This document shows, piece by piece, positions 225 to 17,628 of a DNA stretch of 64,000 nucleotides. A model generated the notes under the pieces. It was not told the DNA's origin. It ran no database searches and was given only the letters and a program-made list of their open reading frames with translations. Positions within the stretch are counted from its first letter, which is position 1. Every line of letters begins with the position of its first letter. The stretch is taken from positions 124,001-188,000 of IMG/VR virus record IMGVR_UViG_3300036770_007495; one strand, given 5' to 3'. A program made the position numbers and the translations under genes.

Positions 225-1280
225 TTATTTTGCAAATTTGATTTTGTATCCACTAGAATCGTAGCATGCAGAGAAAGTTACATCACATGCTCGCAACTCT
301 TTGAACAATCTGATGCAGCTCCATGCATCATACTCTATGCATGCATTGTTGATGATGAATGCTGTACCAAATGGTGCTGTCTTTTTGCCTGGATGCTTAA
401 ACAATACAAACCAGTCATCTTTTTTGCTGCAAATGTATTCAAGAAGTTGAGCTGCTCCTAAAAAATGCATTGCATCTTCTTTGCATTTGATCAAATTCTC
501 GCAGCAAGCAGCACGAGCCATGCAACCAATGCTGTAAGGCAGCATTGAAAAATCATATGGCACTTCATAAATCTTTGATATTTCAGCAAACTGAAATTCA
601 AACTGCATGGCACTAACTACAGGGCGATCTTTTGCAAACTGATTGATGAATTTTTCAATGTTTGCACGATTGCCAATCCATTTGCTTGATTCTCCAATGC
701 GACCGCCATCGCCTTTCAACTCAATGAGGTTGTTGTTGATCATGATGTCGCCTTTGTCAGCTTTGTATCCACCAGCAAGCAACAACAAAGGCAACTCTGC
801 AGGACCAGAATAGCCACGAGTCTTGCCTTCATCAGAAATGGGACGCATTTTTGTCCACACTTCAGCAGTCAATGCACTTGCTTTAAAATCTGCTTTGTAA
901 TATTCACCCAAGAAATCAACAATGTTGGTTCTTTTGAATGCATTTTCTTGCAGATGCTTCAAGAATAATGGAGCAATTGCATCAGTTGATATCGTTTCCA
1001 ACATCTGCAACACACATTCATTGGATACATCACACAAGTAACCAAACAATTTGTTGAGTTCAGTCAATCTATCAATGACTCTGTTGGCAGCAATGAGCTT
1101 GTTGCTTCTTTTGATTAGATTGTCATTGATAACTTTGAAGCATTTGCCAATTTGTGCATGCTGCTTTTGCAGATCAATGTAATGAACAATTATTTCATCC
1201 CACAAACACCCATCAATAACGTATTCCTTTGCATCATCTGTTGCATCATTTGTTGCTACAACGTTGATCATGCAAATCAA
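225..1280 (-). CDS. Hypothetical protein with probable PD-(D/E)XK nuclease-like C-terminal domain
   Basis: 351-aa ORF; segment GPAE...KGDIMINNNLIELKGDGGR resembles an E...GD...ExK restriction-fold active site. Confidence 0.45.
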   Translation of the reverse strand: MICMINVVATNDATDDAKEYVIDGCLWDEIIVHYIDLQKQHAQIGKCFKVINDNLIKRSNKLIAANRVIDRLTELNKLFGYLCDVSNECVLQMLETISTDAIAPLFLKHLQENAFKRTNIVDFLGEYYKADFKASALTAEVWTKMRPISDEGKTRGYSGPAELPLLLLAGGYKADKGDIMINNNLIELKGDGGRIGESSKWIGNRANIEKFINQFAKDRPVVSAMQFEFQFAEISKIYEVPYDFSMLPYSIGCMARAACCENLIKCKEDAMHFLGAAQLLEYICSKKDDWFVLFKHPGKKTAPFGTAFIINNACIEYDAWSCIRLFKELRACDVTFSACYDSSGYKIKFAK

Positions 1281-9385: not shown

Positions 9386-11935
9386 ATGATCGGCTATCGC
9401 AATGCAGTTTATCTGCCTCAAGAAGAATGCGTGAGAGTGTTCACATGGGATGAACATGGCAACAGAACTAAGTTTGATGCACATTACAGTCCGTATGTAA
9501 TGATTGAAGATCCTAACGGCAAAGAAGTTAGCATTTTCAATACCAAGTTGCGCACACGCAAGTTCAAAACTCAATACGATCGCAACAAGTTCATCAAAGA
9601 ATGTGGTACTCGTCGATTGTTTGAAAATCTCAATCCGGTGCAGCAATTCTTGGTTGATGCATATTGGAAGCATAATGCAGAAGCAGACTTTGGTAAATTT
9701 GCTGTGCGTGTCATCACCATTGACATTGAGGTGTATTCACCTTCAGAGTTTCCAACCGCAGAGCATGCTCGTCATCCCATCAACATCATTACGTTTCATG
9801 ACTCTCTTACCAACAGATTCTATTCATGGGGCACTAAAGAATATCATCATAATCGTGATGATTTAACTTATGTGTATTGCAAGACAGAGCGACAGCTGCT
9901 GCTTGACTTTATGGAGTTTTTTGGTACGCTTGAAGTGGATCTTCTCACAGGCTGGAACAGCGCAGGATTCGATATTCCGTACATCATCAATCGCATTGGT
10001 AATGTTCTTGGTGATGAATACTACCAGCAATTGTCTCCTGTGAAGCGTGTTTACAACAGAACACTCAATTCGGGTTTGTTTGGCAAGCAGCAAATTCGCT
10101 GGTACATTGATGGCATCTCTTGCGTAGATTACATTGACATCTACAAGCGCTTTAGTTTTGCCAACAGAGAAAGCTACAAGCTTGACTACATTGCAGAACT
10201 TGAATTGGGCGAGAAGAAGGTGGATTATGGTAATACAAATCTTGCAAGCTTAGCCAATGATGATTGGCAATTGTTTGTAGATTACAACTTGCAAGACGTT
10301 GCGTTGCTTGTGAAGATGGATCAGAAGCTGCAATACATTGAGTTGTTGAGAATGCTTGCATACATGGGTCTTACTACCATGGAAAATGCCATGAGCACCC
10401 TGTCAACCATCTCCGGAACTGCAGCCATCCGAGCCAGACAAAAAGGTCAGTTTTTGCCAACGTTTTTGCGTGGTGAAGATGATGGCAAGAATCCTGGTGC
10501 ATTTGTTGCAGAACCATTGGAAGGATTCCAGACTAGTGTTGTATCATTTGATGCAAACTCTCTGTATCCCAACATCATGATTAGTCTCAACATGTCACCT
10601 GAAACCAAGGTGGGTAAAATCATTGAGAGTGGCGATGAAGGTGTAGTGATTCAACACATCAATGGATCCACTTACAACTTATCACTTGCTAAATTTGCCA
10701 AGTTTGTCAAAGATGAGCAGATTGCCATTTCCAAAGCAAAGGTGTTGTTCAGTCAAAAGAACAAAGGCATCTTGCCTGAAATTGTGGATGAATACTACAA
10801 AGAGCGTGTTGCTGTTCGCAAAGAGATGATGAATCTTAAAAAGAGTGGCAACAAAAGCAAAGATGTACAAGACAAGATCACACAGCTCAATGCCAAGCAA
10901 TTGTGCATCAAGATTTTCATCAATAGCGTATATGGATACATGGGCAACAAAAATGCTCCATTGGGTGATGATGACATTGCTTCATCCATTACTCTGACTG
11001 GTCAGTTTGTAAACAAGTCGTCCAGATCATTGGCACGTGAGTATGTTGCAAGCATTGTAGGCAACAATGACTTTGAAGACATTGCTGTTGCTGGTGATAC
11101 TGACTCTGTCTACTTGTCCATTGCACCTTTGCTGAGACATCACAATGTGCCACTTGCAACTAATGGCAAGGTGACACCCAAGGTGTATGACATCATTGAT
11201 GGTCTCAACAATTACATCAATGAAAAGATCAACGAGAGAATGATCAATGAACTCAATTCAAAAGATCCTCGCATTTTCTTCAAACGAGAATCCATCATTG
11301 ATAAAGCATTGTTCTTGCAGAAAAAGCGGTATGTAGCTCACGTCATTGATGATGAAGGCATTGAGTGTGCCAAGTGGAAGTATGTGGGCGTTGAAGTGGT
11401 ACGAACTGCCATGCCCAAGGCTATCAAGCCCTATGTCAAGAAAATCATTGAGACAATGATTACTTCGCAGAATCGTGCTGATACCAACAAGGTATTGAAT
11501 GAAGCATATGAAGTACTCAAGACTCTCAAGCCAGAAGAAATTGCATATGTCATGGGTGTCAAAGATTATGACAAGTATGCATCTCAATGCAAAGAGTTTA
11601 CAACTGTCAAAGGTATGCCTGTGCATGTTAAATCTGCATATTACTACAACACTCTGCTCAACAAGTTGGAACTGTCGAGCAAATATGAAAAGCTGCAATC
11701 CGGAGACAAATTGAGATGGATGTATCTCAAGACACCCAACAAGTATGGGATGAAGACCATTGCATTCAAGTACTACTATCCAGAAGAATTTCACGCATTG
11801 TTTCAGATTGACTATGAAACAATGTTTGAGAAAATTGTATTCAGTGTTGTGGAGAGATTCTTTGCATGTGTCAAATGGCCTGCGCACAAGCCAAATGAGC
11901 AAATGAGCGCAGATTTATTTGATTTATTTGGTTGA
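9386..11935 (+). CDS. 43: Family B DNA polymerase gp43
   Basis: Exonuclease motifs DIE, GWNS.GFD.PY, YN.QD; polymerase motifs SFDANSLYP, K..INS.YG, GDTDS, KKRY. Confidence 0.97.
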   Translation: MIGYRNAVYLPQEECVRVFTWDEHGNRTKFDAHYSPYVMIEDPNGKEVSIFNTKLRTRKFKTQYDRNKFIKECGTRRLFENLNPVQQFLVDAYWKHNAEADFGKFAVRVITIDIEVYSPSEFPTAEHARHPINIITFHDSLTNRFYSWGTKEYHHNRDDLTYVYCKTERQLLLDFMEFFGTLEVDLLTGWNSAGFDIPYIINRIGNVLGDEYYQQLSPVKRVYNRTLNSGLFGKQQIRWYIDGISCVDYIDIYKRFSFANRESYKLDYIAELELGEKKVDYGNTNLASLANDDWQLFVDYNLQDVALLVKMDQKLQYIELLRMLAYMGLTTMENAMSTLSTISGTAAIRARQKGQFLPTFLRGEDDGKNPGAFVAEPLEGFQTSVVSFDANSLYPNIMISLNMSPETKVGKIIESGDEGVVIQHINGSTYNLSLAKFAKFVKDEQIAISKAKVLFSQKNKGILPEIVDEYYKERVAVRKEMMNLKKSGNKSKDVQDKITQLNAKQLCIKIFINSVYGYMGNKNAPLGDDDIASSITLTGQFVNKSSRSLAREYVASIVGNNDFEDIAVAGDTDSVYLSIAPLLRHHNVPLATNGKVTPKVYDIIDGLNNYINEKINERMINELNSKDPRIFFKRESIIDKALFLQKKRYVAHVIDDEGIECAKWKYVGVEVVRTAMPKAIKPYVKKIIETMITSQNRADTNKVLNEAYEVLKTLKPEEIAYVMGVKDYDKYASQCKEFTTVKGMPVHVKSAYYYNTLLNKLELSSKYEKLQSGDKLRWMYLKTPNKYGMKTIAFKYYYPEEFHALFQIDYETMFEKIVFSVVERFFACVKWPAHKPNEQMSADLFDLFG

Positions 11936-13776: not shown

Positions 13777-14511
13777 ATGAAGAAAATTGTTGTACCTCTT
13801 TCTGGTGGCATGGACTCTGCAGTGCTGCTTTACAAGGCAGTTGAAGAAGCAGATGAAGTGCATTGCATCACATTTGATTATAGTCAGAGGCACAACAGAG
13901 AGTTGCAGTGTGCAGGATGGTTGTATGCAGATGCAAAATACAAAAGCAAGAAGCCAGTATTCTTGAAAAATGTAGATGCATCTTTTATTCGCCATCTTGC
14001 ACCAACTTCTTCTCTCACCAATGATTATATTGAAACACCAGACATCAGAAAGATTGCTGGAGAAGCACAGCCCAAGAGCTATGTACCATTTCGCAATCTG
14101 ATGTTTTTGAGCATTGCATTGTCTCATGCTGAGGCAGTTGGTGCAACAGAGGTGTGGCATGGTGCAACATCAGTTGATTCTTTGGCAGGGTATTGGGATG
14201 CTTCTCCTGAGTTTCTCCCACAGTTAAATGCTGTTGCAGCTCTCAATAGAGAGCACAAGATTCAAGTTGTTGCTCCATTGATTGCTTGTGATAAAGCAGA
14301 CATTGTGAAGATGGGTGTACAGTTGCAAGTACCATTTGCCAAGACATACACTTGCTATTCAGGTGAAGAGCTTGCAGATGCAACAACTCCAAGCAGCAGT
14401 CTCAGAATTCAAGGATTCCTCAAAGCAGGATACAAAGATCCCATCAAATACAAACAGCAAGAACAGATTGACAAGCTGTACATTCAGCACAACTGCCAAG
14501 ACATTGCTTAA
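13777..14511 (+). CDS. queC: QueC-family PP-loop ATPase, atypical (Zn-binding cysteines absent)
   Basis: LSGGMDS PP-loop, FDYSQRH..E, YVPFRNL.FLSIA, APL...KA.IV, TYTCY; YPDC is replaced by YWDA and CGxCxxC by ADATTPSS. Confidence 0.85.
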   Translation: MKKIVVPLSGGMDSAVLLYKAVEEADEVHCITFDYSQRHNRELQCAGWLYADAKYKSKKPVFLKNVDASFIRHLAPTSSLTNDYIETPDIRKIAGEAQPKSYVPFRNLMFLSIALSHAEAVGATEVWHGATSVDSLAGYWDASPEFLPQLNAVAALNREHKIQVVAPLIACDKADIVKMGVQLQVPFAKTYTCYSGEELADATTPSSSLRIQGFLKAGYKDPIKYKQQEQIDKLYIQHNCQDIA

Positions 14512-15518
14512 TAATAGCGATAGCGCTCTTCAATGCGCTGCATGTGCTGCTTGCGAGCAATTCTCATTTGTTCAGCAAGAATAGTTTGCTGTTTAGAATT
14601 GAGTTTGACGCTCTCTTCCAAATCCAATTGAATAGGACGTGCTTCACGAGCTTCTGGTTCTGGAGCAGGAGCAGCAGCTGCTGGAGCAGCAACTTGACCA
14701 AGCTTGTATTTTTCTGATCTATCACCACGCTCCAGCTCAATTTCTGTGACGTGAGATGCAAGAAGTTCATTGCTGACAATGTCACCAACCTTCTTAACAG
14801 CCTTGAGTGCAGAACTGTATTGAGGAGTTCTTGGTACATCCTTCAAACGCACATAGGTAAGCTTGTCACCATCCTGACCCATGAATGAAATGGATGCAAA
14901 TGTTCTCTGATCTTCAGAACGAATTGCTCCCTGTGGCTTGATGTCATTGTTGGTGATGCGCTGCATCAATTCTGCAGGCATTTCTTCTAAATCACCTGCT
15001 GGTGCAGCAGCTGCTGGTTCAGCTTCAACATCACCTTCTTCTGGAACTTCATCTTCAATTTCTTGAGCAATGTCTTGAACAGCAGCACGAACTTGACGTT
15101 CTCTTTGATTGGCAACATTGGCGAGATCCATGCCAAATGTTTCTTGAGCATATTCAATCCAACCTTGAATCCATTCATCTACTGAATTGTATCCTTTTTC
15201 TTGCAATTTTTCAGCAGTCAATTCTCGAAGAATTTCTTTGACCTCTTTGGTAGCAATGACGTTTTCAGCAATTTCAAGTGATTCTGCACAATATCTTGCA
15301 AAAGCAAGTTCTGCTTCACGATAAGATGTGCCTGCAACTTTGCGCAATCTACCATATCGACCTGTAGGAACTTCTTCGCCAATCTTGCCTGCAAAGAATT
15401 TTTTTGCTTCTTTGCCAGGGCCCCATCCAGGAATAGTCTTTTCAACATCTCCAATTTTGACCTTTTCATTCAAAATGTTGTGAGATGCCCAGCCTGGTCT
15501 TTTCAAAATATTGCTCAT
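14508..15518 (-). CDS. Late hypothetical protein, candidate internal head protein
   Basis: TAAATA 5 nt upstream; acidic with A/P-rich linkers; N-terminal segment ends ..ILNE. Confidence 0.75.
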   Translation of the reverse strand: MSNILKRPGWASHNILNEKVKIGDVEKTIPGWGPGKEAKKFFAGKIGEEVPTGRYGRLRKVAGTSYREAELAFARYCAESLEIAENVIATKEVKEILRELTAEKLQEKGYNSVDEWIQGWIEYAQETFGMDLANVANQRERQVRAAVQDIAQEIEDEVPEEGDVEAEPAAAAPAGDLEEMPAELMQRITNNDIKPQGAIRSEDQRTFASISFMGQDGDKLTYVRLKDVPRTPQYSSALKAVKKVGDIVSNELLASHVTEIELERGDRSEKYKLGQVAAPAAAAPAPEPEAREARPIQLDLEESVKLNSKQQTILAEQMRIARKQHMQRIEERYRYY

Positions 15519-15584: not shown

Positions 15585-16286
15585 ATGTGTGCCATTTTTG
15601 GATCATTTGACCGCAGCATGTACGATGTTTTGTTTGAATCAAACAATGCAAGAGGCAATTTTGCTTACAGTCATTGTTTTCTCAACTCAAAAAGTGCTGC
15701 ACCTTTTCACATCAAAAAGTTCAATAAAATTCCAAAAATCAATGATATTACAGATGTGAGTTCAAATGTGTATCATTTTGGTCATTTTCAAGCACCCACC
15801 AGTTCAGTAAGAACATGGAAAGAAGAAACAAGTCACCCATTTGAGCATGGTGATTGGATTGTTGCTCACAATGGCGTTCTCACCAACTTTAAAGAGCTTG
15901 CTGATGAATATGCGCCCATGCTCAACATCAAAGTTGATAGTGCAATCATTCCAATGATGCTTGCAAATCATACATTTGAAATTGATGCCAAGCAAAAAGA
16001 TGCAGCAATGATTGAAAATGCTGTAAAAACTGTTTTGGAAAAACTCAAAGGCACATTTGCATTGTGGATCATCAATCGCAAGCACAAACGAGCTTTTGTT
16101 GCGCGTCAAGGCAGCACTCTTTTTGCAAATGCTAGCACCGGGAGCTTTTGTTCTGTTGAATGCAAAAGTGAAGGGTGGAGTGAACTATCAGAAGGTTACA
16201 TCTACGAAGTGCTCTTCAAAGCAAAGTGCCTTGCTCCATTTGCTAAGTTTAGCATTGACTCTCCATTCTTGTTTATTCAAGAGTAA
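15585..16286 (+). CDS. Stand-alone class II (Ntn) glutamine amidotransferase
   Basis: Starts M-C-A-I-F-G (catalytic Cys1); RG, GHFQAPT, HPF, VAHNG.LTN..EL, VDS, LKGTFA, AR motifs. Confidence 0.88.
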   Translation: MCAIFGSFDRSMYDVLFESNNARGNFAYSHCFLNSKSAAPFHIKKFNKIPKINDITDVSSNVYHFGHFQAPTSSVRTWKEETSHPFEHGDWIVAHNGVLTNFKELADEYAPMLNIKVDSAIIPMMLANHTFEIDAKQKDAAMIENAVKTVLEKLKGTFALWIINRKHKRAFVARQGSTLFANASTGSFCSVECKSEGWSELSEGYIYEVLFKAKCLAPFAKFSIDSPFLFIQE

Positions 16287-16639: not shown

Positions 16640-16954
16640 ATGAGCGAAATAAGAAAATTTGAAACTGGTGCACACAGAAATGATGATGCTAACAAACCCA
16701 AAATGTCATTGATTCCGCATGCTGAATTGATGCGAGTGCTTGCACGATATCGAGCAGGTGCTGATAAATTTGGAGCACACAATTGGAAAAATGGCATGCA
16801 ATTGTCTGAATTGTATGATAGTGCTCAGCGACATTTGACCAGCTGGTACATGAAAGATCAGAGTGAGGATCATGCTGCAGCTGCAGTTTGGAATATTCTT
16901 TGTGCCATGTGGATGGAACAAAACAAACCTCAAATGGATGACAGAATTTTATGA
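16640..16954 (+). CDS. DUF5664-like (dATP/dGTP diphosphohydrolase N-terminal domain) protein
   Basis: FETGA.R....KP..SLIP, GA.K.G..NW..G, SA.RHL..W, EDH.AA..WN. Confidence 0.8.
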   Translation: MSEIRKFETGAHRNDDANKPKMSLIPHAELMRVLARYRAGADKFGAHNWKNGMQLSELYDSAQRHLTSWYMKDQSEDHAAAAVWNILCAMWMEQNKPQMDDRIL

Positions 16955-17628
16955 AAACAACGTTGTATGTGAGTTGCACACAAAAAAGCAATGAAGAGGA
17001 TACTTTGATTAATCAGAGTGCGTACAATACAGGCTTCTTGGGTGAAGATGATACACTGCACATTGTTACCAACAATCGCAGAGGTCTCAGCAAAGTTTAC
17101 AATGAGTTCATCAATGAAAAAATTGCCAAAGAGCATGACCGCATCGTTTTCGTTCATGATGATGTCTACATTGATGATGTCATGATCAATGTGAAGCTCA
17201 ATGAAGCAATGTATGGTGAATCAAAGTTTGACATTGTGGGTCTTGCTGGAACACGCAACCCACAAATTAAACACCCTGCATTGTGGCACATCATGGGCAA
17301 GCGCGAAGATCATCGCGGATATGCTGGTCACATTTTTGGCAAACACAAAGTCATGACTGGGTTTGGACCCACTCCAGATCGTGTTGCCATCATTGATGGT
17401 TTGTTTGTTGCAGTCAATGTTGCTCGTGCACTTGAAACTGGATGGAGGTGGAATGAAAACTTTGATTTTCATCATTATGACATTGCAAGCTGCATTGATG
17501 CAAATGCCAAAGGCATGCGCATTGGAGTATGGCCCATCAATGTGTTTCATGCATCTCCTGGACTTGCAAGCCTAGAAGATGTTGCATGGAGCAAGAGCAA
17601 TGAAAAATTCTTACAGTTGTATTCCTGA
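16951..17628 (+). CDS. GT-A fold glycosyltransferase
   Basis: GLSKVYN, FVHDDV (DxD-like), GLAG, IDGLF, FHHYD; ATGA overlap with the DUF5664-like gene. Confidence 0.85.
   Translation: MKTTLYVSCTQKSNEEDTLINQSAYNTGFLGEDDTLHIVTNNRRGLSKVYNEFINEKIAKEHDRIVFVHDDVYIDDVMINVKLNEAMYGESKFDIVGLAGTRNPQIKHPALWHIMGKREDHRGYAGHIFGKHKVMTGFGPTPDRVAIIDGLFVAVNVARALETGWRWNENFDFHHYDIASCIDANAKGMRIGVWPINVFHASPGLASLEDVAWSKSNEKFLQLYS

What the first reader, a model, noticed from the sequence alone, without database searches (positions are those of the whole stretch)
14185..14420. QueC has lost its Zn-cysteine cluster and YPDC motif
Seen: GYWDASPEF replaces canonical GYPDCRPEF, and TYTCYSGEELADATTPSSSLR replaces T.SCY..CGxCxSC..R, leaving only one of four Zn ligands. 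The spacing and downstream Arg are kept, with Asp/Thr/Ser at the Cys positions, which looks like purifying selection rather than decay. Known: QueC homologs have been repurposed in antiphage systems (QatC, type IV CBASS Cap9). Inference: a neofunctionalised or metal-independent enzyme, or a counter-defence mimic.
Basis: partly seen in the sequence, partly recalled or inferred. Interest (0 to 1): 0.7.

Follow-up and report, generated by a model that had tools for sequence, protein, structure and literature searches.

The report
Zinc-free QueC in a phage DNA-modification pathway
A large uncultured aquatic phage carries a well-conserved QueC (the enzyme that makes the 7-deazaguanine base preQ0) that has lost three of its four zinc-binding cysteines, and it most likely still works as part of a pathway that replaces guanine in the phage's DNA.

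Summary
ORF 13777-14511 (+) is a 244-aa QueC homologue with GYWDASPEF in place of GYPDCRxEF. Asp201, Thr204 and Ser207 sit exactly where zinc-ligand Cys 2, 3 and 4 lie in its nearest relatives.

This is a family trait, not decay. All 120 best metagenomic homologues (56-94% identity) share it, dN/dS is 0.03-0.11 in close pairs, and every other catalytic motif of canonical QueC is kept. The clade forms one well-supported branch inside a viral "YWD" QueC group whose nearest sisters keep the Cys cluster. It is essentially absent from cellular genomes.

The setting is biosynthetic, not defensive:
- The 224.7-kb phage genome also encodes FolE, QueD, QueE, QueF, a DpdA3 transglycosylase and a DpdN-like formyltransferase.
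- These are collinear with Flavobacterium phage immuto_2-6A, whose guanine is fully replaced by formyl-preQ1.
- The immuto_2-6A QueC also lacks the Cys cluster.
- A stand-alone class-II glutamine amidotransferase follows the gene in 42 of 42 loci.

Best reading: a zinc-independent but isofunctional preQ0 synthase, probably fed ammonia by the amidotransferase. The YPDC change is not specific, because many zinc-containing viral QueCs have it. The QatC, Cap9 and counter-defence readings are not supported. This is a new variant of a known enzyme, of moderate interest.

The parts
13777..14511 (+). QueC-family PP-loop ATPase (244 aa) lacking three of the four zinc-ligand cysteines; predicted zinc-independent preQ0 synthase
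   Evidence: Pfam PF06508 E 7e-51 and TIGR00364 155 bits. AF2 model pLDDT 95.3; best PDB folds are QueC 2pg3 and 3bl5, then Cap9. SGGMDS, Y35xQ37xH39xxE42, VPFRN, Y139, D141, K173 and C193-Y194 are conserved.
14188..14214 (+). GYWDASPEF, the variant of the YPDC substrate-pocket motif (Tyr and Asp kept; Pro to Trp, Cys to Ala)
   Evidence: The same YWDx variant occurs in many relatives that keep the zinc cluster.
14344..14406 (+). TYTCYSGEELADATTPSSSLR, the former zinc-knuckle region: C193 kept; D201, T204 and S207 replace Cys 2-4; helix 205-216 starts at P205
   Evidence: residues at ligand columns; secondary structure; pLDDT 89-93 in this stretch.
15585..16286 (+). Stand-alone class-II (N-terminal nucleophile) glutamine amidotransferase, 233 aa, starting Met-Cys; predicted ammonia-supplying partner of the QueC
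   Evidence: Pfam GATase_6 and GATase_7. Best phage matches are the Gat domain of Gat-QueC and phrog_10428. A homologue lies downstream of the QueC gene in 42 of 42 loci, mostly abutting it. Cys2, R23-G24, N96-G97 and D118 are conserved. Complex prediction gives weak support: 0.36 against a best control of 0.00.
14508..15518 (-). 336-aa opposite-strand gene of unknown function lying between QueC and the amidotransferase in this sub-lineage only; probably not part of the system
   Evidence: No Pfam, PHROG or PADLOC hit. Present in L007 and L008. In L009 and L010 a 291-aa opposite-strand gene lies after the pair, not between the two genes. In most other loci the two genes abut.
16640..16954 (+). 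104-aa protein with the N-terminal domain of dATP/dGTP diphosphohydrolases (MazZ-like); possible accessory that depletes or reshapes the dGTP pool
   Evidence: Pfam PF18909 E 2e-20 and phrog_801. Its role here is inference only.

Best explanation
The gene encodes a genuine QueC of a virus-specific lineage in which the C-terminal zinc knuckle has been replaced by a conserved cysteine-free motif, C-x7-D-x2-[ST]-x2-S.

Proposed mechanism (inferred):
- The enzyme still adenylates 7-carboxy-7-deazaguanine (CDG), made by the phage's own FolE, QueD and QueE.
- It amidates CDG and dehydrates the amide to preQ0.
- The ammonia is probably delivered by the class-II glutamine amidotransferase encoded next to it.
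- PreQ0 is then reduced by the phage QueF, installed in DNA by a DpdA3 transglycosylase, and probably formylated by a DpdN-like enzyme.
- The expected result is phage DNA in which guanine is largely or wholly replaced by formyl-preQ1 or a close relative, which protects it from host nucleases.

Shown here: the sequence features, their conservation, purifying selection, the phylogenetic position and the pathway gene content.

Inferred: the catalytic activity, the absence of bound metal, the amidotransferase partnership and the final DNA base. Also inferred is that Asp/Ser/Thr act as a hydrogen-bonded helix cap replacing the structural zinc.
For: 1. Identity. Pfam and NCBIfam QueC hits lie above their cut-offs. 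The model has pLDDT 95 and matches QueC crystal structures best.

2. Catalytic residues. Every residue that Libby et al. 2026 (PMC13329287) found essential or conserved, other than the zinc ligands and P/C of YPDC, is kept: SGGxDS, Y35, Q37, H39, E42, VPxRN with R106, Y139, K173 and Y194.

3. Selection. dN/dS is 0.03-0.11 for pairs with dS 0.08-0.9. D201, S/T204, S206 and S207 are near-invariant across 121 sequences.

4. Phylogeny. The zinc-free clade (23 of 23 sampled rows) has SH-aLRT 96 with or without the motif columns. It is nested among zinc-containing YWD-type QueCs, including KVP40 QueC.

5. Pathway in the same 224.7-kb genome:
- FolE, QueD-like and QueE-like.
- Bimodular QueF.
- Formyltransferase.
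- A 273-aa protein with a TGT fold, 51% identical to the DpdA3 of Flavobacterium phage immuto_2-6A and 45% identical to that of CP220.
- Gene order DpdA3, formyltransferase, kinase-like, QueF is the same as in immuto_2-6A.

6. Precedent. DNA of immuto_2-6A has no dG and 100% fdPreQ1. Its own QueC, gp028, has no cysteine in the zinc motif (TNTSY...SDYKSASSVER).

7. Conservation of the pathway in relatives. The P0134 lineage, also zinc-free, sits in a cluster with QueE, QueD, DpdA3, QueF, formyltransferase and the amidotransferase. A complete 229.7-kb relative also has QueF and DpdA3.

8. Amidotransferase. It is downstream in 42 of 42 loci, with catalytic residues conserved. Phage KVP40 has the same QueC plus GATase pair.
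Against: - No biochemical test exists for any zinc-free QueC. The literature states that zinc is required for QueC function.
- In immuto_2-6A and here, the host's own QueC could in principle supply preQ0.
- Absence of metal is inferred from sequence alone. C193, D201 and, in 52 of 121 members, C200 could still bind some ion.
- The complex prediction for QueC plus amidotransferase gives only weak support: median 0.36 against a best control of 0.00.
- immuto_2-6A has no adjacent amidotransferase.
- The nature of the DNA base in this uncultured phage is unknown.
Confidence: 0.68

Rival explanations
1. Split archaeosine synthase. The zinc-free QueC and the stand-alone amidotransferase together act like the fused Gat-QueC of phage 9g. 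They would convert CDG or preQ0 to the amidine G+ (archaeosine base), so the product of this pair is not preQ0.
For: - The amidotransferase's best phage matches are the Gat domains of Gat-QueC proteins.
- Both proteins hit phrog_10428, the Gat-QueC family, in the matching halves.
- 9g Gat-QueC makes dG+ in E. coli.
- The pair is strictly syntenic.
Against: - The QueC part is only 26-28% identical to the Gat-QueC C-domains and is far from them in the tree.
- Gat-QueC keeps the Cys cluster, so zinc loss is not a Gat-QueC signature.
- The genome encodes QueF and a DpdN-like formyltransferase in the immuto_2-6A arrangement. These need preQ0 and preQ1, not G+.
- The pairing with an amidotransferase predates zinc loss: it is seen in KVP40, L014 and L057, all with zinc-containing QueCs.
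Confidence: 0.12
2. Amide-stop enzyme (QueC*-like). Loss of the zinc domain disables the second, dehydrating half-reaction, so the enzyme makes only 7-amido-7-deazaguanine (ADG), as proposed for Campylobacter phage QueC*.
For: - A QueC* class of proposed ADG synthases exists in DpdA3 phages.
- This phage's DpdA3 is 45% identical to the Campylobacter phage homologues.
- An amidotransferase partner suits an amidation step.
Against: - Campylobacter phage QueC* keeps YPDC-like FPDC and the full Cys cluster, so zinc loss is not its hallmark.
- QueF is present here and in relatives, and it reduces a nitrile, not an amide.
- immuto_2-6A, which has a zinc-free QueC, ends at a preQ1 derivative.
Confidence: 0.1
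3. Repurposed protein-modifying enzyme or counter-defence mimic related to QatC or Cap9. It would ligate a deazaguanine to a protein N-terminus, or decoy host type IV CBASS or Qat systems.
For: - The QueC fold has been co-opted twice for defence.
- Cap9 (9nto) is the fourth-best structural match and a weak sequence hit.
Against: - The only PADLOC hit is a partial generic QueC model (60 bits, residues 99-198), with no QatC hit.
- QatC has remodelled motifs that are absent here, and Cap9 is about 185 aa and keeps the Cys cluster.
- No QatA/B/D, CD-NTase or Cap10 was seen in the regions annotated.
- The gene is embedded in replication and deazaguanine biosynthesis genes.
Confidence: 0.03
4. Decaying or catalytically dead QueC remnant kept by chance.
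For: Three metal ligands regarded as a hallmark of the family are gone.
Against: - dN/dS is 0.03-0.11.
- At least 120 protein clusters down to 56% identity keep the replacement residues and all catalytic motifs.
- The model is confident throughout.
- Synteny with the amidotransferase is strict.
Confidence: 0.02

Closest known systems
Canonical QueC (7-cyano-7-deazaguanine synthase, EC 6.3.4.20; PF06508 cluster 1; PDB 3BL5, 2PG3)
   Same: Same fold. Same P-loop SGGxDS, YxQxHxxE, VPxRN, Tyr and Asp of YPDC, conserved Lys, and the Cys-Tyr pair at the start of the C-terminal motif. Same genomic partners (FolE, QueD, QueE, QueF). Scores above the TIGR00364 cut-off.
   Different: Cys 2-4 of the Cx7-8CxxCxxC zinc site are replaced by Asp, Ser/Thr and Ser. 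Pro and Cys of YPDC are replaced by Trp and Ala/Gly. It is found in viruses only and always has a stand-alone class-II amidotransferase next to it.
[quoted passage not shown]
   Same: It also has no cysteine in the zinc motif, ends in ...SASSVER, and belongs to a phage with the same DpdA3, formyltransferase, kinase-like, QueF module.
   Different: It keeps YPDC, has also lost the first Cys, and carries a longer insert. It has no adjacent amidotransferase. It shares only a short detectable match with the window protein and is placed elsewhere in the tree, although a single origin is not rejected (AU p = 0.06).
QueC plus adjacent class-II amidotransferase of Vibrio phage KVP40 / nt-1 type phages
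   Same: Same YWD-type viral QueC clade (34-37% identity) and the same two-gene arrangement of QueC followed by a small Ntn amidotransferase.
   Different: KVP40 QueC keeps the complete Cys cluster and YWDC. Per the 2019 and 2023 papers, these phages use an ArcS-like protein and the low-efficiency DpdA2 subfamily.
Gat-QueC fusion (phage 9g, some Crenarchaeota), an archaeosine (G+) synthase
   Same: It combines a class-II amidotransferase with a QueC module. It also lacks the Cys of YPDC (YPDN).
   Different: It is fused in the order Gat then QueC and retains the Cys cluster. Its QueC domain is distant (26-28% identity), and its product is G+ rather than a QueF substrate.
QatC and Cap9 (defence-system QueC homologues that deazaguanylate protein N-termini)
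   Same: PP-loop QueC fold and ATP-dependent activation of CDG.
   Different: Both retain a zinc motif. QatC has remodelled motifs and extensions, and Cap9 is a truncated 185-aa form. Both are encoded with their protein targets in bacterial defence operons, none of which was seen around this gene.

Membership tests
Canonical QueC (preQ0 synthase) | PP-loop SGGxDS ATP-binding motif | tested here: met
   SGGMDS at residues 9-14. S9, G11, D13 and S14 are invariant in 100-sequence alignment A3.
Canonical QueC (preQ0 synthase) | YxQxHxxE and VPxRN motifs (Y35 and R99 of E. coli are essential; PMC13329287) | tested here: met
   Y35-S-Q37-R-H39-N-R-E42 and V103-P-F-R106-N107. Y35, E42, R106 and N107 are invariant.
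Canonical QueC (preQ0 synthase) | YPDC substrate-pocket motif | tested here: inconclusive
   Y139 and D141 are kept; P became W and C became A. Only the Tyr was shown to be essential. YWDx is frequent in zinc-containing relatives, and the active 9g Gat-QueC has YPDN.
Canonical QueC (preQ0 synthase) | C(x)7-8CxxCxxC zinc-binding motif | tested here: not met
   Only C193 remains. D201, T204 and S207 occupy the other ligand positions.
Canonical QueC (preQ0 synthase) | Essential Tyr inside the zinc region (E. coli Y189) and conserved Lys (K165) | tested here: met
   Y194 and K173 are invariant.
Canonical QueC (preQ0 synthase) | Profile score above the curated family cut-off | tested here: met
   TIGR00364 155.2 bits against 150.3; PF06508 173 bits against 22.
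Canonical QueC (preQ0 synthase) | Genomic association with queD, queE and folE, and a consumer of preQ0 | tested here: met
   FolE, QueD-like, QueE-like, QueF and DpdA3 are in the same genome.
Canonical QueC (preQ0 synthase) | ATP-dependent conversion of CDG to preQ0 via ADG | not testable with these tools
   This needs an enzyme assay or complementation of a queC mutant.
Gat-QueC (archaeosine synthase) | N-terminal class-II amidotransferase fused to a QueC domain | tested here: not met
   The two parts are separate genes in the order QueC then GATase. Here they lie 1 kb apart with an opposite-strand gene between them.
Gat-QueC (archaeosine synthase) | QueC domain groups with Gat-QueC C-domains | tested here: not met
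   26-28% identity. The 9g and BA3 domains fall in the other half of the tree.
QatC (QatABCD defence) | About 400 aa with N- and C-terminal extensions, remodelled motifs (D(x)4R(x)7WxR and others), and qatA/B/D neighbours | tested here: not met
   The protein is 244 aa, keeps the canonical motifs, has no PADLOC QatC hit, and its neighbours are replication and biosynthesis genes.
Cap9 (type IV CBASS) | About 185-aa minimal QueC with CE(x)6CxxCxxC, next to a CD-NTase and Cap10 | tested here: not met
   The protein is longer and its Cys cluster is absent. There is only a partial hit to PADLOC model PDLC00911 and to 9nto. No CD-NTase or Cap10 was seen in the annotated surroundings.
QueC* (proposed ADG synthase of Campylobacter phages) | Close kinship with Campylobacter phage QueC homologues | tested here: not met
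   26-27% identity, placed in the other half of the tree. That protein keeps the Cys cluster.

The most novel reading that the evidence does not exclude
The zinc-free QueC and its obligate Ntn-amidotransferase neighbour form a glutamine-dependent, metal-free two-subunit nitrile synthase. It would have evolved for the very high flux needed to replace every guanine in a 225-kb genome. Zinc loss would be an adaptive trait tied to the DpdA3/QueF/DpdN 'total replacement' module. Possible reasons are independence from host zinc, or a changed C-terminal domain that docks the amidotransferase or channels ammonia. All three zinc-free lineages seen here co-occur with that module.
Probability: 0.2. Interest if true: 0.65.

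Novelty: new variant of a known kind. Interest (0 to 1): 0.45.

Why it matters
The Cx8CxxCxxC zinc site is treated as a hallmark of QueC, and zinc as required for its function. A large lineage of QueCs under strong purifying selection has swapped three ligands for Asp, Ser and Thr. It sits in phages that apparently depend on preQ0 to rebuild all their guanines.

This is a natural experiment suggesting the zinc is structural and replaceable. It offers a ready test case for what the C-terminal domain does. It also flags a recurrent QueC plus stand-alone amidotransferase pair as a probable glutamine-dependent form of the enzyme.

Finally, it extends the DpdA3/QueF/DpdN (formyl-preQ1 type) hypermodification module from one cultured Flavobacterium phage to a widespread group of uncultured, roughly 225-kb, T4-like aquatic phages.

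Tried and rejected
- Nucleotide search of the region against 50,697 phage records found no match.
- Searches of the genome for a transglycosylase found nothing with Pfam TGT PF01702, DUF6610/DpdA4 PF20314, or DpdA PF23859. DpdA3 was found only through language-model and fold evidence and tblastn to immuto_2-6A and CP220.
- Two unknown proteins beside FolE and QueD were tested as DpdA candidates and rejected. The 335-aa low-complexity protein has no similarity to 9g DpdA. Window 225-1268 (-) has no TGT-like neighbours in the Atlas.
- A guessed accession for Cellulophaga phage phiST returned Vibrio phage nt-1 instead. Supplementary tables of the 2023 paper are not held.
- I asked whether zinc loss tracks acquisition of the amidotransferase. 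It does not: zinc-containing KVP40, L014 and L057 have the neighbour too.
- Contexts of the zinc-containing sisters P0125 and P0127 were uninformative because the contigs are only 1.5-1.7 kb.
It was rerun without that row.
- The number of independent zinc losses is unresolved. The free tree needs 5-6 changes, but the AU test does not reject one clade (p = 0.06 for all lineages; p = 0.29 without immuto_2-6A).

Full report
**What is there**

The window is bases 124001-188000 of a 224,703-bp virus record with direct terminal repeats, judged complete. ORF 13777-14511 (+) encodes a 244-aa protein. It matches Pfam QueC (E 7e-51) and NCBIfam TIGR00364 at 155.2 bits, just above the 150.3 cut-off.

HMMER alignments to the two solved QueC structures place YWDA opposite YPDC and the Cys-free stretch opposite the zinc knuckle. 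The closest zinc-containing relatives have ligands at alignment positions 193, 201, 204 and 207. The window protein has Cys, Asp, Thr and Ser there, with the same spacing to the invariant Arg210.

**It is a conserved family trait**

A search of 5.8 billion proteins returned 1,483 hits. All 120 best hits (56-94% identity, many on 200-229-kb contigs) carry the same replacement:
- C193, Y194, S206, S207 and R210 are invariant.
- D201 occurs in 117 of 121 sequences.
- Position 204 is always Ser or Thr.
- W140 occurs in 105 of 121.

From 39 IMG/VR loci plus others, pairwise dN/dS for pairs with unsaturated dS is 0.03-0.11. This is strong purifying selection, not decay.

The residues that Libby et al. 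2026 found essential or conserved in canonical QueC are all present: the SGGxDS loop, Y35, Q37, H39, E42, VPxRN with R106, the Tyr of YPDC, the conserved Lys, and the Tyr inside the zinc region. An AlphaFold2 model has mean pLDDT 95.3, with no disordered segment in the former zinc region. Its best PDB matches are QueC 2pg3 and 3bl5, then Cap9.

**Where it sits in the family**

An exhaustive profile search of 1.84 billion cluster representatives gave 150 relatives.
- About half carry YWD[C/T/G/A/V] instead of YPDC while keeping three further cysteines. The YPDC change is therefore a broader trait of a mostly viral QueC group.
- Phage 9g Gat-QueC, which is active in E. coli, has YPDN.
- In maximum-likelihood trees the window's zinc-free sequences form one clade (23 of 23 rows, SH-aLRT 96), with or without the motif columns. 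The clade is nested among zinc-containing YWD-type QueCs such as P0122, P0125, P0127, P0128 and KVP40 QueC.
- Other zinc-free sequences exist: P0134, P0177 and P0189, and the QueC of Flavobacterium phage immuto_2-6A.
- The free tree needs five or six changes of state. An AU test does not reject a single origin (p = 0.06; p = 0.29 without immuto_2-6A), so the number of losses is open.
- A scan of one genome for each of 185,579 prokaryotic species found only one zinc-free relative, on a 2-kb MAG contig. The clade is essentially viral.

**Genomic setting**

Just upstream of the window lie FolE, a QueD-like protein and a QueE-like radical-SAM protein.

About 35 kb away, on the minus strand, lie four collinear genes:
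- a 273-aa protein,
- a formyltransferase,
- an AAA_28 kinase-like protein,
- a bimodular QueF.

The 273-aa protein escapes the Pfam TGT and DpdA models. However, its model (pLDDT 93.5) matches only tRNA-guanine transglycosylases among the top 50 PDB hits. It is 51% identical to the annotated DNA guanine transglycosylase of immuto_2-6A and 45% identical to the Campylobacter phage CP220 homologue. This is the DpdA3 subfamily of Cui, Hutinet and colleagues.

The gene order DpdA3, formyltransferase, kinase-like, QueF is the same as in immuto_2-6A. In that phage dG is undetectable and fully replaced by formyl-preQ1.

A complete 229.7-kb relative with a 61%-identical QueC also has QueF and DpdA3. 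The P0134 contig carries the same module.

QueF reduces a nitrile, so the pathway needs preQ0, the ordinary product of QueC.

**The cultured precedent**

The QueC of immuto_2-6A (gp028, 293 aa) keeps YPDC but has no cysteine at all in the zinc motif (TNTSY ... SDYKSASSVER). I found no remark on this in the papers searched. The 2026 family survey treats the zinc motif as a hallmark and describes no zinc-free subgroup within canonical QueC.

**The amidotransferase**

ORF 15585-16286 (+) begins Met-Cys and matches class-II amidotransferase domains.
- Its nearest phage matches are the Gat domains of Gat-QueC fusions.
- A homologue follows the QueC gene in all 42 loci with enough flank. In most, its start abuts the QueC stop.
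- In the window's own sub-lineage, an unrelated opposite-strand gene (14508-15518) has been inserted between them.
- The catalytic Cys2, Arg-Gly, Asn-Gly and Asp are conserved, and close pairs give dN/dS of 0.03-0.08.
- KVP40 and other zinc-containing relatives have the same neighbour, so the pairing predates zinc loss.
- A complex prediction gave weak support only. The median score was 0.36 against a best control of 0.00. That mark was reached by 58 of 80 solved complexes and 2 of 110 mismatched pairs, and passes this low are more often wrong than right unless the guess was likely beforehand. The runs shared at least 91% of their contacts, and the partner's pLDDT was at least 84.

**Interpretation**

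The most economical reading is a zinc-independent but isofunctional preQ0 synthase, probably supplied with ammonia by its neighbour. It would feed a DpdA3-type pathway that replaces guanine in the phage DNA.

The helix predicted at 205-216 begins at Pro205. Asp, Ser and Thr are typical helix-capping residues. I therefore infer that a hydrogen-bonded cap replaces the structural zinc.

Rivals that remain possible but less likely are a split archaeosine synthase and an amide-stop enzyme like the proposed QueC*. A QatC- or Cap9-like role, a counter-defence mimic and a decaying gene are each contradicted by tested features.

**The phage**

Its family-B DNA polymerase is only 30-32% identical to those of pelagimyophages, Methylophilales phages and cyanomyophages. 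There is no nucleotide match in 50,697 phage records. It is a deep-branching T4-like aquatic phage with an unknown host.

**Verdict**

This is a new variant of a known enzyme family, of moderate interest.

Noticed in passing
Own genome outside the window: G000:C1 88552-91391 (= L019:6552-9391, minus strand): A collinear module of DpdA3-like transglycosylase (273 aa), DpdN-like formyltransferase, AAA_28 kinase-like protein and bimodular QueF. It has the same order as in Flavobacterium phage immuto_2-6A, whose DNA is fully fdPreQ1-substituted. This predicts total guanine replacement in this uncultured phage.
   Followed up: yes
[quoted passage not shown]: The annotated QueC of this cultured phage has no cysteine in the zinc-motif region (TNTSY...SDYKSASSVER) although it keeps YPDC. 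I found no mention of this in the literature searched.
   Followed up: partly
P0140 (594-aa QueC homologue from the representative search): It carries an insert of about 350 aa that looks like an intein with a LAGLIDADG-type endonuclease. The insert starts with Cys after TWT and ends ...VHN, immediately before the conserved Cys-Tyr, so the first zinc-ligand Cys would serve as the +1 residue.
   Followed up: no
window 16640-16954 (+): A 104-aa ORF with the N-terminal domain of dATP/dGTP diphosphohydrolases (PF18909, E 2e-20; MazZ-like) lies between the amidotransferase and a glycosyltransferase. It may act on the dGTP pool in a phage that replaces G. Cellulophaga phage phiST has a MazG/dUTPase-like gene in an analogous place.
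   Followed up: partly
L007:3557-7503 (relative on a 228.8-kb contig): The family-B DNA polymerase is called as two ORFs (554 and 331 aa) separated by a 293-aa opposite-strand gene. In the window it is one 849-aa ORF (9386-11935). This may be a split polymerase caused by a mobile insertion.
   Followed up: no
window 14508-15518 (-): A 336-aa acidic, Ala/Pro-rich protein with no family match is inserted between QueC and the amidotransferase in this sub-lineage. In L009 and L010 a 291-aa opposite-strand gene sits after the pair instead.
   Followed up: partly
Own genome G000:C1 122119-123129 (-) (= L003:17119-18126): A 335-aa protein between QueD and FolE has PANT/PPA-type low-complexity repeats and no Pfam hit. 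It shows no similarity to DpdA.
   Followed up: partly
L003:10110-12501 and window 16951-17628: Several glycosyltransferase genes (GT2, GT7C-like, GT10-like, Glyco_tranf_2_5) lie near the deazaguanine genes. The Glyco_tranf_2_5 gene is syntenic with QueC and the amidotransferase in relatives, including the zinc-containing L014. Whether it decorates DNA or a surface structure is unknown.
   Followed up: no
A4 alignment of DpdA3 homologues (L019:8567-9388 and 48 relatives): The DpdA3 family is short (about 265 aa) and has no invariant cysteines, so it appears to lack the C-terminal zinc subdomain of TGT. This would be a second enzyme of this pathway without the zinc site of its cellular homologues.
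   Followed up: no
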